Shown piece after piece: positions 2 through 15,974 of a stretch of DNA of 64,000 nt. Position numbers and translations under genes: made by a program. Each line of letters begins with the position of its first letter. The first letter of the stretch is position 1. The notes beneath the pieces were generated by a model. That model did not search any database. It was given only the letters and a program-made list of their open reading frames with translations, and had not been told where the DNA came from. The DNA is taken from positions 186,001 through 250,000 of the IMG/VR virus record IMGVR_UViG_3300027771_001853, one strand, 5' to 3'.

Positions 2-1540
2 CTGTGCGTATGGGTTTGTTGATGGAACAGACACACATTGGTTTGCCAAGGTATTCGGTGGAGTACCGGTTTCATGATAAAAGCTGCCCCAGGTTACATT
101 AATGGGGATATTCCCATTTATTTGTTCATCCATTAAATATTCACACGCTCCAATAATGGAGATAGAAGCATGTGGTTTTAGGGTTAAACTATCACAGGAG
201 GAACCATTAGTGATAGTTGCTAATGGTGGTGTTATGCATTCGTACCACACTGTAGTTGTAGTTGTTGTTAGTGGTCCGGTAGTGGTTGTTGTGGTTGGGG
301 TACTAGTAGTGGTTGTGGTTGTTTGACCAGGTAACGTGGTGGACGTGGTTGTTTGCCCTGGACAACAAGGTATACCATTAGCTGATATAAGTGCTATAGA
401 TAACGCATTACAACCTAGCATATTTATTAGTCCGTTTGATGTTAGGTCCGATTGGGTCTCCACCATATTAGCGACAGGTATACCAACAATAGGGTTACAT
501 AATGGTTTCCAACATTCATTTTGTACTATCCCACCTGACACTAATAAGTTTGGTATTTGGAAGGCATAATTATCATCACAATTAAGTGAATTAAGTAATA
601 GTAATAAATTACCTGTGGCCCCATATTGTACTGGTACACCAGTACCCACACAACAACTTTCTATCCCACATGTCACACAAGGGTCACCAGTAGTTGTAGT
701 GGTACAACAATTATAACATGTGGTTGTAGTTGTGGTTATAGGAGCTACTGTTGTGGTAGTAGTTGTTAGGGGTTGTATTCCAGTTGTAGTGATAGTGATA
801 ATAGGGCACTGTTGACAATCGACAACACTACCAAGTAGTCCTCTTGTTGGTGGTGTTCCAAAAGTGTTTCCACACTGTCCTCCAACATACCCAGTATGCC
901 AATCACCACTACCCGGATTATTACTTACATCTATATCATAACTGGTTGGTCTGGGACTGTCACCCTCATAGTACATACATGTACCATCAGATAATTGAAT
1001 AACATCACCCTGACTTATAGGCCCTATAGCAGCAGTTAACTGGTTATGGAATGCCTGATTATTTGTATCAGTATTTGGTAAAAAACATGAACCTAAAGGC
1101 GGGGCCCCTGGTGTAGGAACTACTGGTACTGGATTAAAAGCGAGTGAATTATCACAATAACGCCAAGAATGATTGAGTCCGAAAACGGATGGTTGGGTTT
1201 CACACGCATCACAATCACCATATGGTTCAATAAACCAACCAGAATTTTGTAAAGAATGACCACCAAGATATTCAACATGTATAGCTTCTGGTGTTGCGAA
1301 GTCCCCTATATACTCAAAACAAGTCCAAAATTGTGGATATGGAGTTGAGTATAGTCTAATAAAGTCCCCAGGTACTATTTGATGCCCTGCACTTTGTTGG
1401 TAATAATAATTCTGAAAATGTTCATTGTTAGCTATTGTATTTCCTGGAGGCGAACCGGATTTACCAATATTACAATCGAAAGGGACTGGTACACTAAAAG
1501 GTTCGCTAGTAAAACAAGCTCTATATTTTTTATATCCCAT
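2..1540 (-). CDS. Partial (runs off left edge) Cys-rich, poly-Thr modular putative virion fibre/decoration protein; absent from ORF track
   Basis: ATG at 1540 (MGYKKYRACFTSEPF...); frame read as open to the window edge; contains TTTTTT linkers, GIESCC and C-x-x-Y-x-G modules like the 4512-aa protein; TATTTAT motif 16 nt upstream. Confidence 0.85.
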   Translation of the reverse strand, partial: MGYKKYRACFTSEPFSVPVPFDCNIGKSGSPPGNTIANNEHFQNYYYQQSAGHQIVPGDFIRLYSTPYPQFWTCFEYIGDFATPEAIHVEYLGGHSLQNSGWFIEPYGDCDACETQPSVFGLNHSWRYCDNSLAFNPVPVVPTPGAPPLGSCFLPNTDTNNQAFHNQLTAAIGPISQGDVIQLSDGTCMYYEGDSPRPTSYDIDVSNNPGSGDWHTGYVGGQCGNTFGTPPTRGLLGSVVDCQQCPIITITTTGIQPLTTTTTTVAPITTTTTTCYNCCTTTTTGDPCVTCGIESCCVGTGVPVQYGATGNLLLLLNSLNCDDNYAFQIPNLLVSGGIVQNECWKPLCNPIVGIPVANMVETQSDLTSNGLINMLGCNALSIALISANGIPCCPGQTTTSTTLPGQTTTTTTSTPTTTTTTGPLTTTTTTVWYECITPPLATITNGSSCDSLTLKPHASISIIGACEYLMDEQINGNIPINVTWGSFYHETGTPPNTLANQCVSVPSTNPYAQ

Positions 1541-1575: not shown

Positions 1576-4500
1576 TTAAATAGGCGTACATGTAGTTGTC
1601 GTTGTTACTGGACAACATGGTATCCTTAGTGTCGGGTCTTGGTTCTGATAAGGTAACCAAGCTTGGAGACCAGCACACGGTGTTGGTGCTGGTGGTGATA
1701 GTAGTACGGCCCCTGTCACTGTTGGTCCGGTTGGGCTATTTATTATTCTTGCACAAACCGGTACACCACTGATAATAAATAAGTGTGAGGAACCTAAACT
1801 TAAACCATTTATATCAGTAAGTAGTGTTCCAATTGCTACGTATTGTTGGAATACTCCGTTCGTATCAGAACAACACTCTTCCAAACCTCTACCAGTTACA
1901 TTTACAGTTGTTGTTGTTGTGGTTGGGCAACACCCGACTGATTGTCCTTTGTCTTCACATGTGTCACACTGGTCTGTCAACCCGGCTGGCCAAATAGGGA
2001 ATAAGAATGTACCACTAATTGTCCCTACAATAGGTGCACAACCAACACATTTATGGAAACAACAAGCCATACCGTCAAATTGACCACCACTAACCACCAA
2101 TCTAAAGGTATCGTCATTGTTCAATCCAGCAACTCCAGATACAGCACCAGGGTCACCTACTAATTCATAAACATCCCCAGTACAACAATGCTTTACATAT
2201 TGTACTTCTTGGGTTGTAGTGGTTGTGGTGGTTGGTAGTGGGGCACAACACCCTAATGGGAGTGCTTGGTCTAAGGTATAACAATCACTATACACTATTC
2301 CTGGTGTAGTAAAAGTTGATACCGACAAACCAATAGGGTTATTTATAACTTTAAAACATCCCCTTATAATGAGTCCAGTAGTATCTACCAATTGGGTACT
2401 AAACGCTTGACCAACGATTAGACCATTAAGATACACTTCAAATGCTCCTAACGCTACATATTGGTCAAATGCCCCAGTTACTGGGTCCATACAACAAGAC
2501 TCAACACCTATTGTACCACCTATTGTAGTTGTGGTAGTACAGGGAGCTTCCTCATCAAGTACACATATATTACAAGGGTCCTGATAAACAAGAGATGAGT
2601 AGATATTAACTGGTGTTATGGAAACAGCTACACCTGGACCACTCACGTTTGAGACGAACTCCCAACACCCTTCTTGAAGTGAGAATGGTGCTGTAATAAT
2701 ATTACCATATACTACGTCACCTAATATTAAATTACTGTTTAACCAAGTTAATATCACACCTGTAGCTATATACTCATCATAAGGTGGACAACATTGTCTA
2801 ACACCTAAGGTTGGGGATGGTGTTGTAGTAGTTGTGGATACCGGTATTGTAGTTGTCGTTGTTACTGGACAACACAAAGTGTAATTGGTATTTGTATTTA
2901 ATTCTGCACATGATGATGATACAAAAGAAGGTGCAAACATATTAGTTTGTATTATACCAACCGGGTTATTTATTATTTTCCAACAACCAGTATAATCGGA
3001 TGGCATTATAGTACTATAAAACGCGTCACCCAAATTCATCCCCGCTAGAATCGTATAGAGTGTCCCTGCGGCTACAAATTGTAAGGTAGGGTCGCAACAA
3101 TTTTCTAAACCTAATGGGCCAGAAGATGTGGTAGTTGTAGTTACTGGTCCTGTTGTGGTTGTTGTGGTTGGTGGTACCGTGGTTGTTGTTGTTGTTGGAC
3201 AACTACAAGGTTGGTACATTTCTCTACAAATCATACAAGCGTAAGGATAATCCGTTGTCCAAACATCATCTATGTTATTTAAAGTTAACATAGGTGCTCC
3301 CACTACTGGTTCGTAGGTATGGATAGCTTCGTCAACAATAGTAAGACACATATTAGGACATGGTGTGTGTATAGTATCTATTGGTACTATACTTGGGTTA
3401 CCTGTGGTACCACTAACTAAACTAGGTATGTCGTATACGGTATTATAATACACTTGATTTTTATTACAACATAGGTTTTCCCCCCAATATGGGTTAGTTG
3501 GGTCATAACAACATGTTAATAGTCCGTATGTCGTACAACAACCAGTATGACTTGTACCTGAATAATTGTAACATGGGTCTTGTTTATCAACGTTACGAGG
3601 ATTTACCGATATAGGTCCTATTTGGTTGTCTATATATTCCCATACTGTCTGTCCTAAATCCCATGCTGGGTTACTTGCCGGTATAGACGTGTTAACAATA
3701 GTTGAAGCTGTGGCTATTTGGTATGGGTTGTTACCACCAACACAGTTAATATTATCACACCATTGTACTACCCACGATGCTATTTCAAGTGGTGGTATAT
3801 TCACATATTGGAATGGAACTATCTGGTAGTGTCCAATACCAGGTGCGTTATTTTGATTTACGTAGATATAATCAGGTGCACTACCTCCTTGTATTTCATC
3901 TAAACAGTACGTACCATCGGCTGATGTTAAACATACATCATCCTCTACACTTGTAGATGTACCAGTGTAAAATATTTCTAAGTGAGAAACACCAGATAAA
4001 CAGAAACAATCTGCACACCTTTTCGTTGTAGTGGTTGTAGTTGAGGGACAAGGGACAGACCAACTAAAATTAGTCTCCGTACAACCTGAACATATACAAG
4101 GTGGGTCCCCTGCCGCGACACTATTAGTACACCAAAACTGATATGTAAATCCAGCCGGAACTACTGGTGCTGACGGTTCACTTGGAACAACAACATAACA
4201 CCCAGGAACCCCGTTAATTGTACCCAAAAGTCCTTGACCTACTAATATGTCGGTTTGGTCATTTGGATACGATAATATCGTATTACAATCAGCTGTTAAT
4301 GAGAACACATACTCTTCACAACAAGCAGATAACGCGAAAGGTAGACATACGGTAGTAGTGGTTGTAGTACAAGGAATCTCACACGCGGCACAACTATAAA
4401 GTGGTATAGGTGGGTAATTTATACTAATTATTGGGCCCTGTTCTCTACCTATTGTTTCCCAACATTCATTTGTAAGAGTATCGTAGAAAGCATTATAAGA

Positions 4501-7500
4501 AGTTAAACCTGAAGCTGGATTAGTTAAATCACCACACCACCTAGCAAACACAATATTATTTGTTTTACAACAAGCTGATAAACCTTGACATGTTGTGGTT
4601 GTTGTGGTTGGTGGGACTGTTGAGGTTGTTGTAGTAGCTGACCATGCTGTTGTTGTGGTTGTTGTTGGTGGGACTGTGGTTGTCGTACATACAATATGGT
4701 GGGTATCTAAACATCCACCAATAGAAAAACAATCTTGGTAGAATATACTTGGCACTACACTTATATTGTAAAGGTCCGGTCCTGGTATTTCTATTCTCTC
4801 ATAACACATATTAGTCCCCACATCATAAAACACTTGACCGATAGGCATAAAACTTAAATCTGTTTTAGTACAACCAGAACAAGTTTCATTAGTGGTTGTA
4901 AACTTTCTAACAGGTCTAATATATTTTGGGCTACCTTGTATAATATTATTATTTATGTCTGGGTAAGGTATGAGAGATTTACTATGTAATTCTGAACTAA
5001 ATAACTCAGGGAATATGGAGTCTCTACCCGAACATGGTGTACCTGTAGGGTAGTTAGGTCCATTAGACATACCTAAACTTAAATGTATATTATTAAACCC
5101 ATTAAACATTGGGAAGTATTCCGCCCTACTGGCATCACATTCACTAGAAGTCCAGTAATACCCACCTTCAGCAAAATTATATGTAGAGTAAAAAGTTTCG
5201 TTTGGTGGTCCTGCGGCTAGAGGGTTTTCTAAACCAATAGTTTGACCCCCAGTAGAACCAACAAGTCCATTATACATTTCATTCATTTCTTTAATGGTAG
5301 GTAAGTACCAATCTGTGTATCCACTAAATGAGAATGTAGAACATATGTGAGCTGCACTATGAAGAGTTATATTAGAAGCGTCTAAATTACTTCCAGGGTT
5401 TGGCCAAACACTATTACCTATGTATTCTTTTGTACAATCCAAATAACCACCACCAGCATCAGCCTTTTTATCTTTACAATCATATGTAAAAGGTACTGTA
5501 TTACCACTACAAGGGTTTGTTCTAGCCCAATTAACATCAGTAGTACATGAAGGACAACACGGGTAACCGTAAATGTCTGGTGTACAAGCATTATTTATTT
5601 TTGATGTGTTGTCACTACCCGCGAATATTTCTCTTGAAGTTCCACTAACATAAAGGTTCATACATCCCCACATTGTAAATGTATGTGCTGAATCAGTCGC
5701 GTTTGCGGCTATTATATTTTGGGGTAAATCATAGTTAGATAAATTTACATCATATGGTGAAGCTTCCAAATAATTCCCTTGACCATCATGATAGAAGACA
5801 ACACCACCCGCTGGTCCCGTATCACCTATACTATATGTTTGTCCAGTTAAACAACAACAAGGTTTAATACCATAACAAATATGAGGACGAGTAGTAGTTG
5901 TTGTGGTAGGTCTATTAGTTGTTGTGGTGGTTGTTTTTGGTGGGTCCCATATTGTTGTAGTAGTTGTAACACAATCATCTACTATCTTATGAGTTATCTC
6001 ACAACACTCACAATCATCATAAGGTCCATTTAGTGGTACATTGACGTTATAATTTGTTGGTCCTGGGTACGCTATTCTTTCATAACATTGTCCAGATAAT
6101 GGGTCAAACCATGTATTACCTATTGGTACAGTAGATAAATCAGTAGTTGTATATCCAGAACAAGTTGCGTAATTATATGACCTAACAGGTCTTAACCACA
6201 TAAATAGGAAATTCTTCTGCAGTACCTGCATTGTTGTACCCCACGTAGTTGGGAGTCCAATAGCAATTGTATCGTATACTGGGTTGGCTGGATGTTCACT
6301 AGAAGTAATCCATATTGGTGGTTGGTCTGTTGAACCTGAAAAAGGTTTTAAGTCGTCTAAGTCGGCTAAATTATACAATGGAGATAATAGAGCTTGTCCT
6401 GGACCTATATTAAACCATAATTTTAACCATTCGTTATAACTTGGAGCAAACCAATCATCATACCCGTTATAAATTAAAGTGTCGAGATACGTTGCCCATG
6501 GGGTTGGGTCTGGACACCCAGCAGCAATAATCTCATTTGTATTTATTTTTCCCATACCAATTGAAGTACCTAGAGTTGGGCTCGGAAGTACAGGTGTGCC
6601 CCAACAACCCCATCTCATACCAAAACCACCAATTTCTGTTGATTTAGGTGCTACTTCATATATGATGTTATTAATCGTATCAACATGAAATACAAATCCT
6701 CCGGCTTGACCTACATCACCAACATTAGGAACAACACCAATTATAACGTCATCTTCACAACAACAAGGTTTTAACCCCCATATTTCACTTGGTCTTGTTG
6801 TAGTAGTGGTAACAGGTTCACAAATAATTTCATTAATTTGCTCACAAGCATCACAATCTATATAAGGACCTCCAGGATTTGGTACTGGAGCGGTAAAATC
6901 AAAATATGTTAGTCCTGGGTCAGCAATATGAGTAAAGCATTCACCTGACGTAGCGTCATACCAAGTTCCACCTATAGGGATTGCTGATAAATCTGTATAT
7001 GTAAAACCAGAACAACCAGTATCGTTTATACGTTCTGGCATACAATTCGCACCATTAGGGTAATCATCATTACAACAACAAGAATTAAGACCCATATTTG
7101 TAGTAGTATCATCCCAAGTTATACCTTTGTTAGTTAAACTTCCACCCCACCCTGAATTTGGATTTGTGTCACAATCTGAACAAGTGGTTCCGTTAGTTGA
7201 ATTCGTTACAGTACATACTAAATTAGAATAGAAGTCAGGAGTACCTTGACCCATATATCTTAGACAAGTACACGTCATACCTGGTATTCTTGAAGGCCCC
7301 AACCCTGACGGACCATTAGTGTAGGTTATATTGTCATTCCAGTAACACCATCTAACGGTTTCACCCACAGATGGACTTCCAAGATATTGATAGAAATCTA
7401 GATTGTTCGCTAAATAATCGACAGATGGGACAGTACTAGTATTTGTAACACCATCATAACAAGCGTCACCAATGTAGTTTGGTGTACCGAAATATTCGAT

Positions 7501-10500
7501 GCCCCATGTTTTGTTGACTGTCCCCAGAATGGAGGCTATATTAGGTATGTAGTCAGAAATTTCATTCCAACAAACCTCAAATAGGTGAGATACTGGAGCA
7601 GTGGATTTGGTGATGGTGGTGGTAGTGGTAAGGGTAGGAGATTGTGATAGTGACGATTCAAGGTTTTGGAACCTAGAAAATAACGGTACCACACCAACAT
7701 CAGTAGATATATTTAGTTTTTGTCCAAGGCATCTAGCTTCACCTGATTCGTATTTAACTTGGTCTACAATATCTAGAATTTCTATAGATTGGTGTCCATA
7801 GGCGTTATCCTGATACAAATTGATAAAGTCACCAATCTTAAGTGCGTTTACCGATGTTCCATCATTTCTAACAAAATTAGATAGGGGACCACCTCCTGAT
7901 GCTAATTGTTGTGTTGTGGTTGTGGTTGTTTGTCCAAATAAGGTAGTGGTTGTTGTTGTTGGTATAGCGTATGTTGTAGTAGTTGTTGTTGGTATAGCGT
8001 ATGTTGTAGTAGTTGTTGTTGGTATAGCGTATGTTGTAGTAGTTGTTAGTTGCCCAAATACTGTTGTTGTAGTTGTAATTGGGGGTATAGTGTATGTTGT
8101 AGTAGTTGTAGTTGGAGGTATAGCGTATGTTGTTGTAGTTGTAGTTGGCGGTATAGCGTATGTTGTTGTTGGTGTTGTAGTTGGGGGTGTAAATGCCTTT
8201 TTGTCTATATAAGTGCATGAAGTAGTATCACTTTTTGTAACATATTGGTCACCATCTTTTGTCCATACTTTAACTAAATAAGCTAGACCATTAACATTTA
8301 TATCTTCCCAACCTACCTTATTAACCCCCCCATTAGTAGGTTCGTAATATAGAACTGTTGGTGCGGTGGTAATTAGTTTAGTTTTTTCAGGTGAGGTTAT
8401 TTGACCGAAAATATCTCTAGTATCACCAATAAATTGTGGTACCTGTTGTAACATACTTAAACTTTGTAAATCTTCACACACACAACACTCATTATTAGTA
8501 CCTCCGGTTGATAGTCCGTTAACACCAAAATGCCACCAATTACCAACTGGGTAGTATGGGACCGCTGATGAAGATACTGTTCCCATATATTTTAAACATA
8601 GTACATCATTATTAAAACCATTTAAAGTGGAGTGTAGGGTAACTACTTGACCTACACCTGGACTACCAACCCAACTATAAAAGTAATTACCTCTAGTTAC
8701 CATATCATCTAACCCAACTGCTGTCATAAAGTCTATAAGTCCTGATGTTGTTCCCGGGGCGTCAATAGCTGATATGCCCACACCAGGTGGGAATGGTGAT
8801 GAAGTGGGTGATGGTAAAAAAGAAAATAGTTCACATTCCTCAAACACGTGAAAAGTACGTATCTCCGCTAATCCACCATCACAACTATAACAATCATTAT
8901 GTGTTGATAATACGGTAGCGGTACCAACAGGACAAATATCGTAATTAACGCTTAAAGGGCCCCATATTCTATTACCTACATAAGCAATCCAGTAGTCACA
9001 AAATATAGCCATCAATATACCGAAATTACTACAATTACCTAGGGCGAATATTGGGTCGTTAGGGTATGACCAAGTATAAACACCCAAATATTTAATGCAA
9101 TTTGTAAATGTTCCTAGTGCTATACCTGAATCTGGGCAGGCGACTGTCCACTCCATTTCTACAGTTATCACTTCTCCAGGGTTTGGGCTACCTAGATGAT
9201 TATAAAAATTTTGATTATTTAATGAATATTCTTGTACTGCGGCTAAGTCTTGACCAAGGTATGCACTATCAACGTACCCTGTCTGAGAATCAAGCCATAC
9301 TGGAGCAAATTTAGGGTACCCATTCAGTTGTGGTATAGAAGGGTCACCTGGACAATCCTCAAACATATGTAATGTAACATCCACATTTGCGTTTGCGTTT
9401 AATGGTATAGTTGGTAAGGGAGTGCTGTTTGGTAAAGGGTTTAGGTTAACATAGTCTCCCAAGGTCACAGTCGTCTTAGGTTTACTATAGTGGGTACCTT
9501 CCGGCATTATCGGTTGGTATGTCCTTGTATCAGCTGACGGACAACAACATCTTTCTACCCCATAAATTTGTCTAAAAGTGGTACTAGTTGTTGTTGTTGT
9601 TCTAAATATCTTGGTTGTAGTTGTGGTTGTTGGTGCACAATATGGGTCTTCACCATCTCCATTAGCCATACATTCAACACAGTTATCAATACCAAAAAGA
9701 CCTAGTGGGTTTAAGGTTATCCCATTGGGTGGAAGAGGGTTAGGTGTCACTATAACCTTATAACACGCCTTATGGTCTATGTCATTAAATGTCTCACCAA
9801 TAGCCAAACCACTAACTGAACCAGGGTTATCCACAATCCATTGTTCTGCTGTTGAACCAGTGATACAACACTCTTCTACTGTAATACCTGAAGTACATGC
9901 TGTATGAAAACATACTGTCGCTGATAATGTAGCTATACCAATATTATTAGCTTGTGTAGTCCCTAACCAATTAGATAGTAAGTATTCGTGACTATGTACT
10001 GATATAAAACCAAAATGTGTTAACCCACTTACACACCTACCATCAGGTGTTTTACCTGGACCGTAACCAGAATTCCAAAAACAAGCATCCGCACAATAAG
10101 GGTTTGTTTGTTTTATAGCATCAAAATTATATAGACCACCACCATTATTTGCGGCACCAATATCTACAAAGTCCACCGCGGGAACTACTCTACCTTCAAC
10201 AGCTCCATACGCATTTAATTGAGTAATCCTTTCCTGTTGGGTATCATTTACTGGTAATGTGTAAACAAAACTATTAAATGAACCATTATTACCTGGAGTA
10301 CCAGTAGGTTGGTCCCAAACACCATTATAGTATGTACCCATAAAAGAATCAAAATCTCTTAAGTAATTTTCTGTTGGTGTTATTTTCTGTAACCCAGATG
10401 TTACATTAATACTGTTGAGTTGGTTGGTATTCCAATCAGTACAGGGTACTGGTGGTGTTATAACACCAACGCCACTTGGAGCATTACATACCGGTAACCA

Positions 10501-13500
10501 TGGACTATCGTTATACCAAGGTTCAGTTTCATTGACAAAAGAAATAACCACAGCATTAGGGTCATTTAGAGCCGCGGCTATTGGCATATCAAGTCCAGAC
10601 CCACATACACCTTGTGGAACACTTATCCCAACTGGGGTTGGTATAAATGCATTTGTACCTTCCCATGGGTATCGTGAATACCTTAACCAAGATTCAGATT
10701 GTTGTTGTGGTGGTGGTACTGTAGCCTGATATAAACACCCAGTATAACCAGGTAATGTTTGAATAAATTGTTGCCACCAAGGTAGAACCACATTATTAGC
10801 TAATTGAGCTACACTAACAGCAAAACTACCACTCCCATCATAAAACACATAAAAATTAGTACCAGAAAATATACATGGACATTCACTAGGTGGTGTAGGT
10901 GGGCATTCACATTCACACGATACTAGAAGTGTGGTTGTGGTTGTTGTTGGTGGTGCGGGTGTAGTAGTTGTAGTTGTTGGTGGCCCAAGTGTTGTCGTAG
11001 ACGTGGTAGTAGATGGGGCACACGGGTCTGTAGTTGTTGTTGTCGATACAGGTACTGTAGTTGTTGTGGTTGTGGGACAAGGATTGTCCGGTGTCTCACA
11101 AAAACTACCAGCACATTCTAAACCAGCTAACGCTGTTACTCCAGATATACTACCTAATATAGTATTAGTTATAGGTCCTGAAGGTAATGTATATTTTGTT
11201 AAAACTAGGTTATCTGTCGCTCCAGAACAACACGTATTTTCTCCCCAACTAATTTCAATATCGTTACCATGACTGGAGCCTGGGGCGTAATCGGATAGGT
11301 CAATTGGACTACCAGCTGGTATTGGGTTTTTGAAAAAGAAACAGTATGTGTGTTCCATTAGTGGAGTTGGTGTAAGTGCTGGAGCACCAGCAATACAAGG
11401 TGCCGCCCCACCACGACACCTACCACCACCTGCACCAGCACTAATTGGTGGTGTCGCATCACAAATAGCAACAGGGAATCCAGGTCCTGTTGGGTACCTA
11501 ACTAATTCATATTTCCAACTTCCTATAATTGTACCAGAACCGTCAGGATGTCTAACCGTGAAGTTCCAATTATTAGTACTAGCGGTAAAATTATCCCCGT
11601 TAAAAACTTGACCTGATTGGGCTGAGTCATACATCAATACTTTCATATACTCTGCACCCATTACTTGGTCTTTGAATGTCCCCACCCCTGGTAGGTTACC
11701 GTTTGTACCTACATCAAATACCCCTTGTGTTACAATTTCTCCTGGTGTAGTCATACCCCCATCTTTCCATATCTCAGCATATTCTGGTTGACATGGTGTA
11801 CCCATTCCACCAAATTGTAAAGTTATTTCAAATTGAGATGGTTCACCTACCATTACACCTAAACCTATATTAGCTGGATTTTCAAGATATAAAATATTTG
11901 CACAATTCCCAGCAGGAGAATTAGGCCATTGGCCACATTGGGCTACACCTGCCTGATACCAATCTCTATTACCGGTACAATTTTGATGCTGAAGAGTACC
12001 TTCACCACAAGGTGAAGGTGTTGTAGGCATACATGATGGAACACCAGGAAAATTACCATCCATTACAATATTATAGTCCCATTGTCCTATGTTAGTGTTA
12101 GTAAATGGGTCGTATACCGTTAAAGTTAGTGGGTTGGTTGTGTCCCCAGTTAACATATCCATACTTACAAAATTCCCATCTTTGTCAAGTACGTTTAAAC
12201 TTAACTTAAGTGATTCAGCCCCTATTATTGGTCCAAACAATGGAGCAGCTCCTTGAATATTTCCGGGAGCACATGACCAAGGGGTGGGAATAGTAAAGGC
12301 ACATTGACCAGATATAATCAGACTTTCGTCAATCCACGTATGTTGGAACTGTTGTGGTGTACCCCCCGAACAACTAGGTAGTTGTCTTACAATGTAAAGG
12401 TCTTCACAATCATATAGTAAACCAGCGGAAATACTACTATTAAGTAATGGGTTTATAGTCCCAGGTATTGGATTGGCGTTTAATGTTGTACCATCAAAAA
12501 TACACACATAACCAGCTGATGAATTACAATTTCCTGGACCAAAAGAACATTCATCCAAATAAGTATAAAAATTGTTAGTTCCTGGTACGTTAGATAACCC
12601 ACTCATATGAGCATATGGGTTAGGTGGACTTGTAAATACGGTAAAATCACCCAAATAAGTTACACTACCATTAACCCATGGTTGTATCTGATATACCGGA
12701 TGAACAGTATTATTATAAGGAATAAAAATTAATTTATCATTTAAGCTATCATAACCTAAACAACCTTCACCTAACTCCTCAGTTCTTATACCACTTGTGT
12801 TATTACACACATCATAACCAGTATAAGTTTGAGCTAAAGACCCACTACCTGTGTTAGGGTTTACTTGGTATATGTGTAAGTCGTATCTAGATGTACCATT
12901 ACAAGTATCATCTATTTTATGTTCTAAAAATGCCCCATATAAAAAGTTATTTGTTGTTCTTTTAGCGAACCCTTGGAAGAACATATGTGGTATAGCTCCC
13001 CACATTGTTGGGTCTTTTAAAGCAATAGGTAACGTGGTTTGGGTGTGGGGTGAAGTTTTATGTATCGAATAAAAACCATTATTTCCTGTGGTTCCCGTAT
13101 TGATTATCTCCCAAGCTCCTGTAATTAAGCAACACTCATCACAACACGGTATCGTTGTCGTTGTTGTTGACGCGTAAGGGTCTGGTGTTGTCGTACTAGT
13201 AACGCAATCACCAGTAAGTGGTATAGTACCAAAATCACATGGGTCTGGTGTTGTAGTTGTTGTGGTTGGTGGTACCGTGGTTGTTGTTGTTGTTGGACAA
13301 TCACCAGTTAACGGGATTGTACCAAAATCACATGGGTCAAGTGTTGTTGTAGTTGTTGTTTGACCAGGTAACGTGGTTGTAGTTGTTGTTTGACCAGGTA
13401 ACGTGGTTGTAGTTGTTGTTTGGCCAGGTAATGTAGTTGTAGTTGTAAAACCTAAAATTGTTGTGGTGGTAGTAACACACTCACACTGACCATCAGTCAC

Positions 13501-15114
13501 CAAAAAGTCGTTCGCTAAAGGTGGGATGCCGTCATAGATAGTTGTTAATGTACTCCCAGTACCAACTAATAGATAATTGTTTGCTCCAATATCCCTAATA
13601 AGGCTCCACCAGTTATTAGATATCGGTAGTGACCCCCAAGGGTTTTGTTTTATTAATATACCGTGTGTTAATATACTATTAGAAGGGTTACTAATGTGGT
13701 TATATATGTACGGTGAAGTCACATCATTACAATAAGAACCTTCTAACATATCACCAGGATACGTTACACCAGATAATACACCTTGGAAATACTCTACAGG
13801 GTAAATACACACACATTCTGTAGTGGTGGTTGTGGTTGTTGGTTCTGGTGGGATATAAGTCGTTGTTGTTGTGGTAGAAGGGCATTCAGCTGTAATATAC
13901 TCAGTATACGAACAACCGTCTGGTGCTAACACTTCCACACAATACGTTTTACAACATTCTAAAGTCAAATCAAAACAAGTGGTACTTGCTGTACACCAAC
14001 CAAAATGTGGAGCTGTACATCCTGACACGTACATTATTTGGCAATTGGTACAATCTGAATCACATAAAGATATTGTAGAGTTTGTAAAATCTGGAGAAAC
14101 ATCTATACTATACTCTTCTGTACAAAGTGTTGTGGTAGTTGTAACAACAGGTTCTATAATCTCAAACCCAAACATTTTATGATTGTAATTAGGTACGTAT
14201 GTTGTTTGTGTTGACGCTGTTTGGGGTACCACCTCCCAGTTATAGGTTTGTGGGTCTATTTTAGCTAACCCATTGTAGGATAGAAAGTAAAATTTATCAT
14301 CATACTCATCGTAGGTTAAGTCACCAACCCACGCTCTTCCACCAAATGGTATATTACGACCCGCTTGGTTATTAATAACATATGAAACATGTGCTGAACA
14401 ATAACTTAATACTGTGTTAACCCCATTGTTTGTGTTTATGTGTTGGAATGTTAGACCACTTGTCATCCCACTGATATAGCCTACCGCGTATAACTCACTC
14501 TGTCTATACGCTAAACCAAGACCACTATTTAAAAAACAGGTAGTCCCAGAATAAAATGGTTGTTGTGGTGTTGCATTTGGATGACTAACACTCCAAGTGT
14601 GTAAATATAAATCACCAACAGCTGGGTAAACCCATGAACCCATACCACCCATTGTCATATCAACCCCTTGCATGTTTGTACACCTTAATAAGGTAAAACA
14701 ATCGTTTGCTTCATCATAAGCAAATCCACCAACTAAAGGTTGCCACCCATGGTTATCGTAAGGTAATGTTAATGTAAGCCCCGAATATATTGTTTTGGTC
14801 CTACCTCCCCAGTCTTGGTCTGTTTTGAAGATTTGTCCTGGTAATTGCCAAGAACTTATGGAACCATTTTCACCAGCGAACCCATAAAGTTTTTTATTCT
14901 TTTGGGTCATTCCATAGTATGGGTCCATATTAAAAAATGGACCAGAGTACGAAGATTCTGGAGATTCTGTGATACCCGCTTCGTTCCTAGGTATTAATGG
15001 TGGTGGTGAACCTACGGGGGCTAAATTCCACTCATATAAATCATACTTCCATATGTTAGGTCCAGAAATTGAACCTTGTTGTATAGTATAAGCGGAGAAA
15101 TTTGGTGAAGGCAT
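1576..15114 (-). CDS. Giant 4512-aa modular Cys-rich/poly-Thr protein, putative virion fibre or adhesin with two DUF1566-like lectin domains and a vWA-like segment
   Basis: Single long ORF; dozens of T5-T7 linkers; GGxVF...DW[FY]xP...RPVR motifs; YDGSGS motif; located among structural genes. Confidence 0.8.
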   Translation of the reverse strand: MPSPNFSAYTIQQGSISGPNIWKYDLYEWNLAPVGSPPPLIPRNEAGITESPESSYSGPFFNMDPYYGMTQKNKKLYGFAGENGSISSWQLPGQIFKTDQDWGGRTKTIYSGLTLTLPYDNHGWQPLVGGFAYDEANDCFTLLRCTNMQGVDMTMGGMGSWVYPAVGDLYLHTWSVSHPNATPQQPFYSGTTCFLNSGLGLAYRQSELYAVGYISGMTSGLTFQHINTNNGVNTVLSYCSAHVSYVINNQAGRNIPFGGRAWVGDLTYDEYDDKFYFLSYNGLAKIDPQTYNWEVVPQTASTQTTYVPNYNHKMFGFEIIEPVVTTTTTLCTEEYSIDVSPDFTNSTISLCDSDCTNCQIMYVSGCTAPHFGWCTASTTCFDLTLECCKTYCVEVLAPDGCSYTEYITAECPSTTTTTTYIPPEPTTTTTTTECVCIYPVEYFQGVLSGVTYPGDMLEGSYCNDVTSPYIYNHISNPSNSILTHGILIKQNPWGSLPISNNWWSLIRDIGANNYLLVGTGSTLTTIYDGIPPLANDFLVTDGQCECVTTTTTILGFTTTTTLPGQTTTTTTLPGQTTTTTTLPGQTTTTTTLDPCDFGTIPLTGDCPTTTTTTVPPTTTTTTPDPCDFGTIPLTGDCVTSTTTPDPYASTTTTTIPCCDECCLITGAWEIINTGTTGNNGFYSIHKTSPHTQTTLPIALKDPTMWGAIPHMFFQGFAKRTTNNFLYGAFLEHKIDDTCNGTSRYDLHIYQVNPNTGSGSLAQTYTGYDVCNNTSGIRTEELGEGCLGYDSLNDKLIFIPYNNTVHPVYQIQPWVNGSVTYLGDFTVFTSPPNPYAHMSGLSNVPGTNNFYTYLDECSFGPGNCNSSAGYVCIFDGTTLNANPIPGTINPLLNSSISAGLLYDCEDLYIVRQLPSCSGGTPQQFQHTWIDESLIISGQCAFTIPTPWSCAPGNIQGAAPLFGPIIGAESLKLSLNVLDKDGNFVSMDMLTGDTTNPLTLTVYDPFTNTNIGQWDYNIVMDGNFPGVPSCMPTTPSPCGEGTLQHQNCTGNRDWYQAGVAQCGQWPNSPAGNCANILYLENPANIGLGVMVGEPSQFEITLQFGGMGTPCQPEYAEIWKDGGMTTPGEIVTQGVFDVGTNGNLPGVGTFKDQVMGAEYMKVLMYDSAQSGQVFNGDNFTASTNNWNFTVRHPDGSGTIIGSWKYELVRYPTGPGFPVAICDATPPISAGAGGGRCRGGAAPCIAGAPALTPTPLMEHTYCFFFKNPIPAGSPIDLSDYAPGSSHGNDIEISWGENTCCSGATDNLVLTKYTLPSGPITNTILGSISGVTALAGLECAGSFCETPDNPCPTTTTTTVPVSTTTTTDPCAPSTTTSTTTLGPPTTTTTTPAPPTTTTTTLLVSCECECPPTPPSECPCIFSGTNFYVFYDGSGSFAVSVAQLANNVVLPWWQQFIQTLPGYTGCLYQATVPPPQQQSESWLRYSRYPWEGTNAFIPTPVGISVPQGVCGSGLDMPIAAALNDPNAVVISFVNETEPWYNDSPWLPVCNAPSGVGVITPPVPCTDWNTNQLNSINVTSGLQKITPTENYLRDFDSFMGTYYNGVWDQPTGTPGNNGSFNSFVYTLPVNDTQQERITQLNAYGAVEGRVVPAVDFVDIGAANNGGGLYNFDAIKQTNPYCADACFWNSGYGPGKTPDGRCVSGLTHFGFISVHSHEYLLSNWLGTTQANNIGIATLSATVCFHTACTSGITVEECCITGSTAEQWIVDNPGSVSGLAIGETFNDIDHKACYKVIVTPNPLPPNGITLNPLGLFGIDNCVECMANGDGEDPYCAPTTTTTTKIFRTTTTTSTTFRQIYGVERCCCPSADTRTYQPIMPEGTHYSKPKTTVTLGDYVNLNPLPNSTPLPTIPLNANANVDVTLHMFEDCPGDPSIPQLNGYPKFAPVWLDSQTGYVDSAYLGQDLAAVQEYSLNNQNFYNHLGSPNPGEVITVEMEWTVACPDSGIALGTFTNCIKYLGVYTWSYPNDPIFALGNCSNFGILMAIFCDYWIAYVGNRIWGPLSVNYDICPVGTATVLSTHNDCYSCDGGLAEIRTFHVFEECELFSFLPSPTSSPFPPGVGISAIDAPGTTSGLIDFMTAVGLDDMVTRGNYFYSWVGSPGVGQVVTLHSTLNGFNNDVLCLKYMGTVSSSAVPYYPVGNWWHFGVNGLSTGGTNNECCVCEDLQSLSMLQQVPQFIGDTRDIFGQITSPEKTKLITTAPTVLYYEPTNGGVNKVGWEDINVNGLAYLVKVWTKDGDQYVTKSDTTSCTYIDKKAFTPPTTTPTTTYAIPPTTTTTTYAIPPTTTTTTYTIPPITTTTTVFGQLTTTTTYAIPTTTTTTYAIPTTTTTTYAIPTTTTTTLFGQTTTTTTQQLASGGGPLSNFVRNDGTSVNALKIGDFINLYQDNAYGHQSIEILDIVDQVKYESGEARCLGQKLNISTDVGVVPLFSRFQNLESSLSQSPTLTTTTTITKSTAPVSHLFEVCWNEISDYIPNIASILGTVNKTWGIEYFGTPNYIGDACYDGVTNTSTVPSVDYLANNLDFYQYLGSPSVGETVRWCYWNDNITYTNGPSGLGPSRIPGMTCTCLRYMGQGTPDFYSNLVCTVTNSTNGTTCSDCDTNPNSGWGGSLTNKGITWDDTTTNMGLNSCCCNDDYPNGANCMPERINDTGCSGFTYTDLSAIPIGGTWYDATSGECFTHIADPGLTYFDFTAPVPNPGGPYIDCDACEQINEIICEPVTTTTTRPSEIWGLKPCCCEDDVIIGVVPNVGDVGQAGGFVFHVDTINNIIYEVAPKSTEIGGFGMRWGCWGTPVLPSPTLGTSIGMGKINTNEIIAAGCPDPTPWATYLDTLIYNGYDDWFAPSYNEWLKLWFNIGPGQALLSPLYNLADLDDLKPFSGSTDQPPIWITSSEHPANPVYDTIAIGLPTTWGTTMQVLQKNFLFMWLRPVRSYNYATCSGYTTTDLSTVPIGNTWFDPLSGQCYERIAYPGPTNYNVNVPLNGPYDDCECCEITHKIVDDCVTTTTTIWDPPKTTTTTTNRPTTTTTTRPHICYGIKPCCCLTGQTYSIGDTGPAGGVVFYHDGQGNYLEASPYDVNLSNYDLPQNIIAANATDSAHTFTMWGCMNLYVSGTSREIFAGSDNTSKINNACTPDIYGYPCCPSCTTDVNWARTNPCSGNTVPFTYDCKDKKADAGGGYLDCTKEYIGNSVWPNPGSNLDASNITLHSAAHICSTFSFSGYTDWYLPTIKEMNEMYNGLVGSTGGQTIGLENPLAAGPPNETFYSTYNFAEGGYYWTSSECDASRAEYFPMFNGFNNIHLSLGMSNGPNYPTGTPCSGRDSIFPELFSSELHSKSLIPYPDINNNIIQGSPKYIRPVRKFTTTNETCSGCTKTDLSFMPIGQVFYDVGTNMCYERIEIPGPDLYNISVVPSIFYQDCFSIGGCLDTHHIVCTTTTVPPTTTTTTAWSATTTTSTVPPTTTTTTCQGLSACCKTNNIVFARWCGDLTNPASGLTSYNAFYDTLTNECWETIGREQGPIISINYPPIPLYSCAACEIPCTTTTTTVCLPFALSACCEEYVFSLTADCNTILSYPNDQTDILVGQGLLGTINGVPGCYVVVPSEPSAPVVPAGFTYQFWCTNSVAAGDPPCICSGCTETNFSWSVPCPSTTTTTTKRCADCFCLSGVSHLEIFYTGTSTSVEDDVCLTSADGTYCLDEIQGGSAPDYIYVNQNNAPGIGHYQIVPFQYVNIPPLEIASWVVQWCDNINCVGGNNPYQIATASTIVNTSIPASNPAWDLGQTVWEYIDNQIGPISVNPRNVDKQDPCYNYSGTSHTGCCTTYGLLTCCYDPTNPYWGENLCCNKNQVYYNTVYDIPSLVSGTTGNPSIVPIDTIHTPCPNMCLTIVDEAIHTYEPVVGAPMLTLNNIDDVWTTDYPYACMICREMYQPCSCPTTTTTTVPPTTTTTTGPVTTTTTSSGPLGLENCCDPTLQFVAAGTLYTILAGMNLGDAFYSTIMPSDYTGCWKIINNPVGIIQTNMFAPSFVSSSCAELNTNTNYTLCCPVTTTTTIPVSTTTTTPSPTLGVRQCCPPYDEYIATGVILTWLNSNLILGDVVYGNIITAPFSLQEGCWEFVSNVSGPGVAVSITPVNIYSSLVYQDPCNICVLDEEAPCTTTTTIGGTIGVESCCMDPVTGAFDQYVALGAFEVYLNGLIVGQAFSTQLVDTTGLIIRGCFKVINNPIGLSVSTFTTPGIVYSDCYTLDQALPLGCCAPLPTTTTTTTQEVQYVKHCCTGDVYELVGDPGAVSGVAGLNNDDTFRLVVSGGQFDGMACCFHKCVGCAPIVGTISGTFLFPIWPAGLTDQCDTCEDKGQSVGCCPTTTTTTVNVTGRGLEECCSDTNGVFQQYVAIGTLLTDINGLSLGSSHLFIISGVPVCARIINSPTGPTVTGAVLLSPPAPTPCAGLQAWLPYQNQDPTLRIPCCPVTTTTTCTPI
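7952..8170 (-). repeat. Intragenic 30-bp tandem repeat encoding YAIPTTTTTT
   Basis: Three perfect copies of gttgttgttggtatagcgtatgttgtagta at 7952-8041, then degenerate copies. Confidence 0.9.
13205..13446 (-). repeat. Intragenic repeats: 3 x LPGQTTTTTT (30 bp) and 2 x PCDFGTIPLTGDC
   Basis: 13351-13380 identical to 13381-13410; third copy near-identical; duplicated peptide visible in the translation. Confidence 0.9.
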
Positions 15115-15131: not shown

Positions 15132-15974
15132 TTATGAACATGCTCCTGAGTAGGTCACACCGTTAGTTATTCCACTATACACAGATATATAAGTTCCTAC
15201 CAGAGTGGCACCGGTAAGTAGTCTAACTGGGGTAAATGTAGTACCAGAAGTACTGGAAGCATAGACTTCCCAACCATAAACACCCGTAGTTAAAAGAGAG
15301 TATTTCAAATGACTATCCCAATAATTTTCTTTTGTTAACCCGGAGGACGAGTAACTAGAAAAAGGGTAACTATACTCAAGAGTGAATCCTGTTGAGATTA
15401 CGTGGTCCCTGAAAGTCCCAGCTGTAGTTGTAACACCACTTAGACAAACGGACTGTAAACAGTACGCTGTATTAGATTCACAAGCTGTGTTATAAGCTAT
15501 CGAATCAGTAAATTTAAAGAAAGGACCTGTATTATCTGTAGTAGCTGAAACCACTTGTACCGTACCAAACATATCCGTTTTATAATATTTTCCATTTGTT
15601 AACCCAGGAGCGTTTACAGCTCTACCAATTAGATTTGTATTTCCTGATGTACTTTGTGGGGATATAACTCCTTGTACCATAACATTGTATGGGTTATAGG
15701 TGCACCCGGTCCCACCAAAAATTGTAGTGGCGGTTAAACAACAAGTACCACTGAAACAATCACAGTTTTCACACTCTGGATGTGGTACGGAAATAGTCTT
15801 TATGCAGTAGTCTTCACCACAAGGAATACACATTGGAAAACATACATTTCCAAATACGTCACCAGGACCTGTCTGTCCCGAATAAACGCAATTAGTACAA
15901 CCAGATTGGCACAAATATACATCATAAGGTGCACTACTTCCGGTTATATAAAAATTGATACAATTTTGAGCCAT
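15132..15974 (-). CDS. Cys-rich putative virion structural protein, very rich in [S/T]GxT
   Basis: 280 aa; N-terminal YDVYLCxxxCxNC module resembles one in the giant ORF; TATTTATA upstream. Confidence 0.7.
   Translation of the reverse strand: MAQNCINFYITGSSAPYDVYLCQSGCTNCVYSGQTGPGDVFGNVCFPMCIPCGEDYCIKTISVPHPECENCDCFSGTCCLTATTIFGGTGCTYNPYNVMVQGVISPQSTSGNTNLIGRAVNAPGLTNGKYYKTDMFGTVQVVSATTDNTGPFFKFTDSIAYNTACESNTAYCLQSVCLSGVTTTAGTFRDHVISTGFTLEYSYPFSSYSSSGLTKENYWDSHLKYSLLTTGVYGWEVYASSTSGTTFTPVRLLTGATLVGTYISVYSGITNGVTYSGACS

What the first reader, a model, noticed from the sequence alone, without database searches (positions are those of the whole stretch)
1576..15114. 4512-aa beads-on-a-string protein with eukaryote-like Cys/mucin architecture
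Seen: many small Cys-rich modules (e.g. G-x-x-x-CC...GC[WF]xxxxxP...C...CC, repeated at least six times in the C-terminal part) separated by poly-Thr spacers, two propeller-like regions (GLAY/DLTYD/LGYD blades) and no evident signal peptide. Inference: a very long flexible fibre or head appendage. So many cysteines in a protein made in the cytoplasm imply post-lysis oxidation, metal binding or a phage oxidase encoded elsewhere.
Basis: partly seen in the sequence, partly recalled or inferred. Interest (0 to 1): 0.6.

Follow-up and report, generated by a model that had tools for sequence, protein, structure and literature searches.

The report
Giant cysteine-rich, threonine-linked phage fibre protein
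A marine jumbo phage that probably infects Bacteroidota encodes a real 4,512-residue chain of some twenty small disulfide-type domains joined by short threonine runs, most likely a long sticky appendage of the virus particle, and nearly all of its parts are unknown to current databases.

Summary
Window 1576-15114 on the minus strand is one intact 4,512-aa ORF with 215 Cys, 636 Thr and 45 Thr runs, and no signal peptide or membrane segment. It is not an assembly artefact: two colinear orthologues exist, and near-identical DNA occurs in marine metagenomes from at least 14 studies.

Cys is the best-conserved residue (204/215 invariant), and three Cys pairs are each lost together in one orthologue. 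That argues for disulfides.

The genome is a 297.6-kb T4-like phage. It encodes a type IX secretion (T9SS) cargo protein, which points to a Bacteroidota host.

The giant is the largest of eight co-oriented Cys/Thr-rich genes. Its 1,977-aa neighbour shares its signature module.

That module is about 95 aa with six Cys. The giant has four canonical and four divergent copies. The module folds confidently (pLDDT 92), matches nothing in the PDB, and resembles only uncharacterised phage proteins.

Two DUF1566/Lcl_C lectin-like domains are the only recognisable parts.

My best reading is a flexible virion fibre or adhesin that oxidises after lysis. Its linkers may be O-glycosylated by the adjacent island of fucosyl-, sulfo- and other glycosyl-transferase genes. 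Virion location and glycosylation are inferences.

"Eukaryote-like" and "propeller" are not supported by homology. No Erv or DsbA oxidase is encoded.

The parts
1576..15114 (-). Whole giant ORF, 4,512 aa (P0001). Acidic (D+E 378, K+R 139), with no signal peptide and no membrane segment.
   Evidence: orthologues P0002 and P0003
14143..15114 (-). N-terminal domain, aa 1-324, with 4 Cys. Carries blade-like motifs of the G-[LF]-A-Y-D type. Fold unknown; possibly the part that anchors to the particle.
   Evidence: No Pfam hit; weak propeller-family neighbours; AlphaFold run uninformative
13474..14127 (-). Two small Cys modules, aa 330-413 (12 Cys) and 433-547. 73-74% of positions are invariant across the three orthologues.
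13153..13473 (-). Long linker, aa 548-654: T5-6 runs spaced by LPGQ-type tetrapeptides, plus two 14-residue two-Cys loops.
11074..13152 (-). aa 655-1347 (29 Cys): the second region with blade-like motifs (655-1000), then a variable, beta-rich pair of domains (1001-1347; 42% invariant).
9631..10929 (-). aa 1396-1828 (20 Cys). Unknown domain that ends in a divergent module-A copy (aa 1735-1830).
   Evidence: no matches; hhalign 91%, E 1.1e-6
8146..9585 (-). aa 1844-2323, the most variable domain (30% invariant). Carries a repeated motif of the G-S-P-x-x-G-E-x-V type that also occurs near aa 2566.
7912..8145 (-). Longest linker, aa 2324-2401: T5-6 runs spaced by YAIP/FGQ. No position is invariant across the orthologues, and metagenome contigs break here.
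6811..7911 (-). aa 2402-2768: a 94-aa low-Cys domain, a variable domain (2501-2696), and the first copy of module B (2697-2768).
6199..6795 (-). DUF1566/Lcl_C-like lectin-type domain, copy 1 (aa 2774-2972).
   Evidence: It aligns with copy 2. Profile A8, built on it, hits Lcl-CTD (PDB 8Q4E) at E 1.9e-6.
5968..6198 (-). Module B, copy 2 (aa 2973-3049), about 75 aa and Cys-bearing. It follows each DUF1566 domain.
   Evidence: E 1e-15 and 4e-14 between copies; not related to module A
4924..5889 (-). DUF1566/Lcl_C-like domain, copy 2 (aa 3076-3397), with a Cys-rich insertion. This is the best-conserved large domain (76% invariant).
   Evidence: PF07603 at E 6.8e-7 / 2.4e-8 and 30-32 bits, below the 34.9 cut-off. 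Most of the 569 hits of the exhaustive profile search fall here.
4687..4923 (-). Module B, copy 3 (aa 3398-3476).
4030..4602 (-). Two divergent module-A copies (aa 3505-3590 and 3586-3695).
   Evidence: hhalign 85% and 83%
3196..4023 (-). aa 3698-3973, an unknown 20-Cys domain.
1606..3126 (-). C-terminal array of module A (aa 3997-4503): four canonical copies and one divergent copy, each about 95 aa with the Cys pattern CC..C..C..CC, separated by T5-7 runs.
   Evidence: HMM E 1e-19 to 1e-25. AlphaFold pLDDT 91.9, pTM 0.83 on a 36-copy alignment. No PDB match.
15132..15974 (-). Upstream neighbour, 280 aa with 18 Cys, 17 nt from the giant's start. It carries the TATTTAT motif at -24 and is probably co-transcribed with the giant.
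16036..17235 (-). First gene of the block, 399 aa with 27 Cys and 3 Thr runs.
2..1540 (-). N-terminal part of the downstream paralogous beads-on-a-string protein (P0154, 1,977 aa, 108 Cys, 15 Thr runs, 7 copies of module A). It continues beyond the window's first base.
30693..50808 (-). Glycosylation island between the block and the head genes; it also holds unrelated genes (PhoH lies just outside at 29919-30668, dUTPase, an exonuclease-like gene). Sugar genes: two GDP-mannose 4,6-dehydratases, epimerases/reductases, two DegT aminotransferases, GT2 family enzymes, a GT11 fucosyltransferase, GT7C-like, TOD1/MUCI70-like and NodZ/FUT8-like enzymes, two sulfotransferases, a methyltransferase and an AsnB-like amidotransferase. 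It is a candidate modifier of the Thr linkers; this link is an inference only.

Best explanation
The ORF encodes a giant modular structural adhesin of a marine T4-like jumbo phage whose host is probably a T9SS-bearing member of the Bacteroidota.

Shown:
- It is a real, conserved chain of about 20 globular, Cys-rich modules joined by stereotyped T5-6 linkers.
- It contains two DUF1566/Lcl_C lectin-type domains and eight copies of a phage-restricted six-Cys domain.
- It lacks any export signal.
- It sits in a block of eight similar genes.

Inferred:
1. It is made in the cytoplasm late in infection and mounted on the particle as a long flexible fibre, with its sister proteins. One of those sisters carries a trypsin-like protease.
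2. Its roughly 100 Cys pairs close into disulfides once lysis exposes the particle to oxic seawater. This locks the beads against proteases and shear.
3. The lectin-type domains give reversible, multivalent binding to glycans of the host surface or of marine particles and mucus.
4. The T5-6 runs act as extended spacers and are candidate acceptors for O-glycosylation by the phage's own fucose/sulfate-oriented glycosylation island.
For: Reality and conservation.

Disulfide-type cysteines:
- 204/215 are invariant, against 40-67% for most other residues (Trp 79%).
- Three pairs are co-lost: 1218+1240, 2028+2039 and 2590+2615.
- There are 31 CC doublets, and all small modules have even Cys counts.

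Folded modules: module A gives pLDDT 91.9.

Adhesin character:
- DUF1566 match at E 2.4e-8.
- A profile built on the domain hits the solved Lcl-CTD at E 1.9e-6. Lcl-CTD is a glycan-binding adhesin head (PMC11162425).
- DUF1566 is a recurrent target domain of diversity-generating retroelements in phage receptor-binding proteins.

Structural context:
- The block of 8 Cys/Thr-rich genes lies between tail tube and sheath (154-161 kb) and the head genes (237-250 kb), all on one strand.
- The 1,977-aa neighbour shares module A.
- A protease fusion lies in the block.
- The C-terminal 70 residues of a small protein in the block match cyanophage proteins, most of them annotated as hypothetical.
- A TATTTAT motif sits about 21-27 nt upstream of block genes and of scaffold, protease, TerL, sheath and tube genes.

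No export: no signal peptide, membrane segment or T9SS C-terminal domain in the giant.

Precedents: disulfide-linked fibres in the aquatic myophage Pam3 (PMC9942802); phage-encoded virion O-glycosylation in mycobacteriophages (cited in PMC12619734).

Glycosylation genes next door.

Thr runs occur almost only in the signal-less block proteins and not in the phage's secreted Cys-rich protein.
Against: - There is no direct evidence that the protein is in virions.
- No PHROG, Pfam or tblastn link to any known fibre, decoration or baseplate protein was found.
- The N-terminal, presumably anchoring, part could not be folded.
- The TATTTAT motif precedes 60 of 231 ORFs, so it does not by itself mark late genes.
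- A DNA polymerase gene lies between the tail genes and the block.
- Forming about 100 correct disulfides without a catalyst is demanding, and no Erv or DsbA enzyme is encoded.
- Glycosylation islands in marine phages are usually read as modifiers of host surface polysaccharide. Nothing here ties the enzymes to the Thr runs.
- The DUF1566 score is below Pfam's curated cut-off.
Confidence: 0.5

Rival explanations
1. The protein is not part of the particle. It, and the rest of the block, would be soluble or matrix-forming products released at lysis. They might glue cells or particles together, coat debris, or act as a decoy that keeps progeny near new hosts.
For: No homology to any known virion protein. 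The protein is extreme in size and acidity. The phage also makes a clearly non-virion secreted Cys-rich protein with a signal peptide and a T9SS C-terminal domain, and that protein shares repeats with two block members.
Against: The giant has no export signal, so release would need lysis. The block takes about 33 kb, or 11% of the genome, and is conserved in synteny in two other phages. That cost is more typical of structural genes. The block shares an upstream motif with head and tail genes.
Confidence: 0.2
2. The cysteines are metal ligands (zinc or iron-sulfur) that stabilise the small modules in the reducing cytoplasm. On this view they are not disulfide partners.
For: The protein is synthesised in a reducing compartment and no oxidase is encoded. 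Seventeen CxxC spacings exist.
Against: Vicinal CC is the dominant spacing (31 cases). His is scarce (56 in 4,512 residues). The signature pattern CC..C..C..CC is unlike zinc-ribbon or zinc-knuckle patterns. Cys residues are lost in twos. Module A is a beta-rich domain of about 95 aa with a hydrophobic core, not a minimal metal knuckle.
Confidence: 0.07
3. The fibre reading is right but the glycosylation link is wrong. The island would remodel host lipopolysaccharide or capsule, or phage DNA, and the T5-6 runs would be bare, stiff spacers.
For: Sugar-nucleotide and glycosyltransferase islands are common in marine T4-like phages and are usually assigned to the host surface (own knowledge). Close homologues of the sulfotransferase were not seen on the long contig that carries the orthologous giant (a weak test). 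Only 14 sites match the Bacteroidota D-[ST]-[AILVMT] glycosylation motif.
Against: The run length is tightly fixed at 5-6 with mixed codons, which suggests a recognised unit rather than a mere spacer. Thr runs are confined to the signal-less block proteins. The island lies between the head genes and the block, on the same strand.
Confidence: 0.45
4. The long frame is an assembly or annotation artefact: a chimera created across repeats.
For: Short-read contigs break at the Thr-linker repeats.
Against: Three independent assemblies give colinear 4,457-4,512-aa frames. Cys residues are conserved throughout. Independent runs cover every inter-linker piece at 95% or more, mostly 99% or more, and show only an in-frame indel.
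Confidence: 0.01

Closest known systems
Legionella collagen-like adhesin Lcl and other DUF1566/Lcl_C (PF07603) proteins, including DUF1566 receptor-binding proteins of Bacteroides phages
   Same: The giant has two domains with the DUF1566 signature (GG-x-V-F/Y, W-G-C, D-W-x-L/A-P-x-x-x-E, W-x-S-S). A profile built on them detects the solved Lcl-CTD. In both cases a glycan-binding head is held on a long repetitive stalk.
   Different: Lcl-CTD has no disulfides and sits on a collagen triple helix. Here the domains are internal, carry Cys-rich insertions and sit on Thr-run linkers. The Pfam score is below the curated cut-off. No diversity-generating retroelement repeat was found for them.
Eukaryotic gel-forming mucins and mucin-like adhesins
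   Same: Thr-rich spacers alternate with Cys-rich globular domains. The protein is very large and acidic, and fucosyl- and sulfo-transferase genes lie nearby.
   Different: No homologous domain (vWD, C8, TIL, CysD, CK, EGF, SEA) was found. The Thr runs are 5-6 residues and the linkers at most 78 aa, not kilobase-scale PTS arrays. There is no signal peptide. Synthesis is in a bacterial cytoplasm. The resemblance is one of design, not descent.
Phage fibres and decorations: T4 long tail fibres and Hoc, disulfide-anchored fibres of cyanophage Pam3, curly or head fibres of jumbo phages
   Same: A large modular protein of a T4-like myophage that lies between tail and head genes, with an adhesive domain repertoire. 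Pam3 shows that virion fibres of aquatic myophages can depend on disulfides.
   Different: No sequence or profile similarity to any of them. The Cys density (about 100 potential disulfides in one chain), the Thr-run linkers and the length have no counterpart that I could find in the 50,697-record phage collection or in five literature searches.
Glycosylated fibrils of giant viruses (Mimivirus) and glycosylated mycobacteriophage capsid and tail proteins
   Same: The virus carries its own sugar-nucleotide synthesis genes and transferases next to structural genes. The likely acceptors are Ser/Thr-rich segments of surface proteins.
   Different: Glycosylation here is only inferred. The enzymes are of different families, and the candidate substrates are Cys-rich multi-domain chains.
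T9SS cargo adhesins of Bacteroidota (SprB-like)
   Same: Giant repetitive surface adhesins occur in the probable host phylum. One weak structural neighbour of module A in BFVD is annotated 'SprB repeat'. The phage itself encodes a T9SS cargo protein.
   Different: The giant has neither a signal peptide nor a T9SS C-terminal domain.

Membership tests
DUF1566 / Lcl_C (PF07603) | Match to the Pfam model above the gathering score (34.9 bits) | tested here: not met
   30.0 bits at E 6.8e-7 and 32.3 bits at E 2.4e-8, for copy 2 only. Significant, but below the curated cut-off.
DUF1566 / Lcl_C (PF07603) | Homology to a solved family member | tested here: met
   A 30-sequence profile seeded on copy 1 hits Lcl-CTD (8Q4E/8QK8) at E 1.9e-6. 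The identity of that entry was confirmed in PMC11162425.
DUF1566 / Lcl_C (PF07603) | Glycan binding and trimer formation | not testable with these tools
   Needs glycan arrays and solution studies.
Gel-forming mucins | vWD/C8/TIL, CysD or cystine-knot domains | tested here: not met
   No Pfam, NCBIfam or PDB match, either in the whole protein or in ten separate segments.
Gel-forming mucins | Secretory signal and long, densely O-glycosylated PTS arrays | tested here: not met
   No signal peptide. Thr runs are 4-7 residues and linkers at most 78 aa. Glycosylation was not tested.
Known phage tail-fibre, Hoc or decoration families | Profile or sequence similarity to a characterised virion protein | tested here: not met
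   PHROGs 0 hits; tblastn against 50,697 phage records found no match.
Known phage tail-fibre, Hoc or decoration families | Presence in the particle | not testable with these tools
   Needs virion proteomics or EM.
T9SS cargo proteins | N-terminal Sec signal plus C-terminal sorting domain (PF18962) | tested here: not met
   PF18962 matches only another ORF (genome 39355-43320) at E 4.5e-12. The giant's N-terminus is not hydrophobic.
   The AlphaFold model is unusable. Only one blade-like motif is shared between the two regions. Language-model neighbours are weak.
Module A (new, phage-restricted six-Cys domain) | About 95 aa with the pattern G-[LIV]-E-x-CC, then C-[WFY]-K-[IV]-I-x-N-P, then C, then CC-P | tested here: met
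   36 copies in 8 proteins. An exhaustive search of 1.84 billion representatives finds it in only 5 further proteins, all rich in Cys and Thr runs.

The most novel reading that the evidence does not exclude
The phage builds its own mucin-like glycocalyx. On this reading the eight signal-less proteins, rich in Cys and Thr, are virion fibres. Their T5-6 runs would be O-glycosylated in the cytoplasm by the phage-encoded fucosyl/galactosyl/sulfo-transferase island, and their disulfide beads would close after lysis. The result would be a 'hairy', sulfated-fucan-coated particle, a bacterial-virus counterpart of Mimivirus fibrils. Its DUF1566 lectin heads would bind algal or host sulfated glycans.
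Probability: 0.2. Interest if true: 0.85.

Novelty: new variant of a known kind. Interest (0 to 1): 0.62.

Why it matters
If the reading is right, about 11% of a cosmopolitan marine phage genome is spent on extracellular-style proteins that are disulfide-rich, Thr-linked and made without any export pathway. That raises three testable questions.
- How does a cytoplasmically made virus protein acquire about 100 correct disulfides?
- Do phages of Bacteroidota glycosylate their own particles with fucose- and sulfate-bearing glycans?
- What do such fibres bind in the sea: host capsule, algal polysaccharide or marine snow?

The work also yields a confidently predicted small domain, with no match among solved structures, that occurs only in phages. 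It adds a clear example that current family libraries miss nearly all of a 4.5-kaa protein.

Tried and rejected
- Pfam, NCBIfam and PHROGs on the whole protein and on ten segments: only the weak Lcl_C hit.
- phmmer and profile searches of PDB sequences: nothing for the whole protein or for aa 1396-1828. My by-eye guess that aa 1396-1828 has a vWA-like D-x-S-x-S motif therefore has no support. The atlas search of that region was also blank.
- tblastn of both halves against 50,697 phage records: nothing.
- IMG/VR pattern scan with the N-terminal alignment: only an identical fragment of the same phage.
- AlphaFold of aa 1-1200 with three sequences: pLDDT 26. This is uninformative and is not evidence of disorder.
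- Erv/ALR and DsbA: absent.
- Diversity-generating retroelement: the only DNA repeats of the gene elsewhere in the genome are Thr-linker repeats.
- Module B as a relative of module A: rejected (hhalign probability 10%).
- The 323-aa gene inside the block looked to me like a GT-A enzyme because of a D-S-D motif. It belongs instead to a very large family (at least 1,478 clusters) of phage proteins with no Pfam domain and no PDB match. I make no claim for it.
- T4-type late promoter TATAAATA: found upstream of only 14 ORFs, so it was not used.
- Co-occurrence of the sulfotransferase with the orthologous giant on the TARA contig: not seen. This is a weak negative.
- Cluster names for the DUF1566-type hits: none on record.
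- No alternative genetic code was needed.
Full report
1. WHAT IS THERE

Window 1576-15114 is a single open frame of 4,512 codons on the minus strand. Composition is as follows.
- 215 Cys (4.8%), 636 Thr (14.1%), Gly 9%, Pro 8%.
- Strongly acidic: D+E 378 against K+R 139.
- 45 runs of four or more Thr. 41 of them are exactly five or six residues, most often preceded by Pro, and written in mixed ACN codons.

The fixed length and mixed codons point to selection on the peptide, not to replication slippage. Merging nearby runs gives 19 linkers, from 5 to 78 residues, that cut the chain into about 20 globular pieces. There is no N-terminal hydrophobic segment and no convincing membrane helix.

2. 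IS IT REAL?

A word-based search of 5.8 billion proteins found two colinear orthologues of 4,457 and 4,488 aa, 53-69% identical over the whole length. One lies on a 262-kb TARA Oceans scaffold and the other on an unrelated assembly, and both have the same neighbouring genes.

Near-identical DNA is present in marine water, sediment and sponge metagenomes of at least 14 studies. I laid contigs of four independent runs on 6 kb of the gene.
- They match at 95% or more, mostly 99% or more.
- They break only at the linker-coding repeats.
- The single indel is a net 12-nt, in-frame deletion beside a Thr run.

An assembly artefact is excluded.

3. THE CYSTEINES

Across the three orthologues Cys is the most conserved residue: 204 of 215 are invariant (95%), against 79% for Trp and 40-67% for the rest.

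The few variable Cys include three couples that disappear together in one orthologue: 1218+1240, 2028+2039 and 2590+2615. That is what disulfide partners do.

Vicinal CC is the commonest spacing (31 cases), His is scarce, and every small module has an even Cys count. I therefore read the cysteines as disulfide partners and give metal binding a low probability.

4. THE MODULES

- It is about 95 residues with the Cys pattern CC..C..C..CC.
- An iterated HMM finds four strong copies at the C-terminus.
- hhalign adds four divergent copies at aa 1735-1830, 3505-3590, 3586-3695 and 4298-4400.
- With a 36-copy alignment AlphaFold gives pLDDT 91.9 and pTM 0.83: a compact domain of seven strands and two helices.
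- Foldseek finds nothing in the PDB (best E 2.2).
- An exhaustive VIA scan of 48,161 chains gives a best Z of only 2.7.
- The nearest ESM-Atlas shapes are three clusters of uncharacterised proteins that are 100% viral (TM 0.57-0.63).
- BFVD gives only weak hits to uncultured-phage proteins.

(b) Two DUF1566/Lcl_C domains lie at aa 2774-2972 and 3076-3397, and each is followed by a module B of about 75 aa.
- Pfam scores are significant but below the curated cut-off.
- An exhaustive profile search of 1.84 billion representatives with aa 3076-4197 gave 569 hits, nearly all on this domain.
- A profile built from them detects the solved Lcl C-terminal domain 8Q4E at E 1.9e-6.
- That domain is the trimeric head of a Legionella adhesin and binds sulfated glycans, fucoidan included (PMC11162425).
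- DUF1566 is also a known variable receptor-binding domain in Bacteroides phages.

(c) Everything else has no detectable relative. That covers aa 1-324, 330-547, 655-1347, 1396-1734, 1844-2323, 2402-2696 and 3698-3973.

The most variable pieces are 1844-2323, 2501-2696 and 1001-1347. The best conserved are the second DUF1566 domain and the B modules.

The 'propeller' label could not be tested. The only available fold run of aa 1-1200 had a three-sequence alignment and failed.

5. CONTEXT

The window is part of a 297,623-bp virus record, 93% complete by CheckV. Recognisable virion genes are these.
- In the window: a Gp23-type capsid protein, a T4-type portal and a large terminase.
- At 154-161 kb: tail tube and sheath.

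The capsid protein is nearest to those of Flavobacterium phage immuto, Microcystis phage Mel-JY01 and Rhodothermus phage RM378, at 36-42% identity.

One phage ORF (genome 39355-43320) has a signal peptide and a T9SS C-terminal sorting domain. T9SS is, to my knowledge, confined to Bacteroidota and close relatives, so this points to such a host.

The giant is the largest member of a block of co-oriented genes at genome 170-203 kb. Eight of them are Cys-rich (3.1-9.4%, against a genome mean of 1.46%) and Thr-rich, and six carry Thr runs. Their sizes are 510, 1,051, 640, 636, 1,977, 4,512, 280 and 399 aa.
- The 1,977-aa neighbour has seven copies of module A.
- The 640-aa member ends in a trypsin-like protease (PHROG hit; catalytic motifs read by eye).
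- The 636- and 510-aa members share Cys repeats with the secreted T9SS cargo protein.
- The C-terminal 70 residues of a Cys-free 249-aa protein inside the block match cyanophage proteins, most of them annotated as hypothetical.

The giant starts 17 nt after the 280-aa gene. That gene, like five other block genes and the scaffold, protease, terminase, sheath and tube genes, has a TATTTAT motif about 21-27 nt upstream. The motif is strongly concentrated upstream of starts. 60 of 231 ORFs have it in their 60-nt upstream region, although the whole genome holds only 189 copies on both strands. It does not by itself define a late class.

Between the block and the head genes lies a glycosylation island of about 20 kb. 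It encodes GDP-fucose-type sugar synthesis, aminotransferases, at least seven glycosyltransferase-like proteins (GT11 and NodZ/FUT8-like fucosyltransferases among them), two sulfotransferases and a methyltransferase.

6. MECHANISM, WITH ITS STATUS

Shown:
- a conserved, signal-less chain of folded beads with disulfide-type cysteines on Thr-run strings;
- two lectin-type domains;
- membership of a block of like proteins.

Inferred:
- It is a fibre mounted on the particle.
- The disulfides close after lysis in oxic seawater, because no Erv or DsbA enzyme is encoded.
- The thioredoxin-fold proteins present are an ordinary 105-aa thioredoxin and a signal-peptide-bearing 432-aa protein with a WCGPC motif.

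Pam3 shows that aquatic myophages can depend on virion disulfides.

Speculative:
- The T5-6 runs are O-glycosylated by the neighbouring island. Mycobacteriophage virion glycosylation is the precedent (cited).

Rivals are a non-virion product released at lysis, metal-binding cysteines, and an island that serves the host surface instead.

7. COMPARISON AND NOVELTY

The design resembles mucins and long bacterial adhesins, but there is no homology to eukaryotic modules, so 'eukaryote-like' is convergence at most. The only family membership supported is DUF1566, and that one is borderline by Pfam's own threshold.

Module A and most other beads are unknown to Pfam, PHROGs and the PDB, and module A is restricted to a handful of marine phage proteins. 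I rate the finding as a new variant of a known kind, namely a phage fibre or adhesin. It has an unusual chemistry and a testable link to virion glycosylation.

8. LIMITS

- Virion location, oxidation state, glycosylation and ligand are all untested.
- About two thirds of the chain has no structural model.
- The host assignment rests on one T9SS cargo gene and on capsid-protein neighbours.

Noticed in passing
G000:C1:39355-43320 (-), outside the window: The phage encodes a 1,321-aa, 75-Cys protein with a Sec signal peptide and a T9SS C-terminal sorting domain (PF18962, E 4.5e-12). A virus-encoded T9SS cargo is a strong clue to a Bacteroidota host. It shares Cys repeats with the 636- and 510-aa block proteins and with a 1,139-aa ORF at 118671-122090.
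   Followed up: partly
G000:C1:35225-36523 (-), outside the window: A 432-aa protein with a signal peptide and a thioredoxin-type WCGPC motif, that is, a phage-encoded exported thiol-disulfide oxidoreductase candidate. Its C-terminus looked like a T9SS tail to me, but PF18962 did not report it.
   Followed up: partly
window 30693-50808 (-): An island of about 20 kb of sugar-nucleotide synthesis genes, at least seven glycosyltransferase-like genes (GT2, GT11, GT7C-like, TOD1/MUCI70-like, NodZ/FUT8-like), two sulfotransferases and a methyltransferase, directly downstream of the capsid gene. The fucose-plus-sulfate flavour is unusual for a phage.
   Followed up: partly
whole genome; for example window 15975-16035 and 17236-17285: The motif TATTTAT sits about 21-27 nt upstream of 60 of 231 ORFs, on the sense strand. 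The genome has only 189 copies on both strands. It is a likely phage promoter element and differs from the T4 late TATAAATA.
   Followed up: partly
window 50753-52591 (-): The major capsid protein is 612 aa, and the Gp23 match covers only residues 344-597. It therefore carries an N-terminal extension of about 340 residues with unknown function.
   Followed up: no
G000:C1:177705-179627 (-) = L012:7705-9627: A 640-aa block member combines an N-terminal Cys module, three Thr runs and a C-terminal trypsin-like serine protease (PHROG 20754; His and G-D-S-G motifs seen by eye). It may be a protease carried on a stalk.
   Followed up: partly
G000:C1:176682-177653 (-) = L012:6682-7653: A 323-aa protein inside the block belongs to a very large, well-conserved phage family (PHROG 4417; at least 1,478 clusters at about 50% identity) with no Pfam domain. 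In phages of Firmicutes its homologues lie next to the major tail protein gene.
   Followed up: partly
window 17286-19826 (+): Five small genes on the opposite strand interrupt the otherwise minus-strand run between the Cys-rich block and three unknown 504-639-aa genes. The orthologous locus has the same cassette, and one of its genes has a faint WYL hit.
   Followed up: no
window 7594-7614: One marine-sediment metagenome carries a net 12-nt, in-frame deletion beside the Thr run at aa 2496-2500, so linker length varies in nature. Linker aa 2324-2401 has no invariant position among the orthologues.
   Followed up: partly
G000:C1:4258-15066, 109552-117771, 138805-145422, 145732-150699, 256726-262152: The genome holds five more very large ORFs (3,602, 2,739, 2,205, 1,655 and 1,808 aa) that are not Cys-rich. 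None was examined.
   Followed up: no
window 26380-27078 (-) and 29919-30668 (-): A weak sigma-70 region-2 match (E 6e-4, below the cut-off) and a clear PhoH gene lie between the unknown structural-looking genes and the glycosylation island.
   Followed up: no
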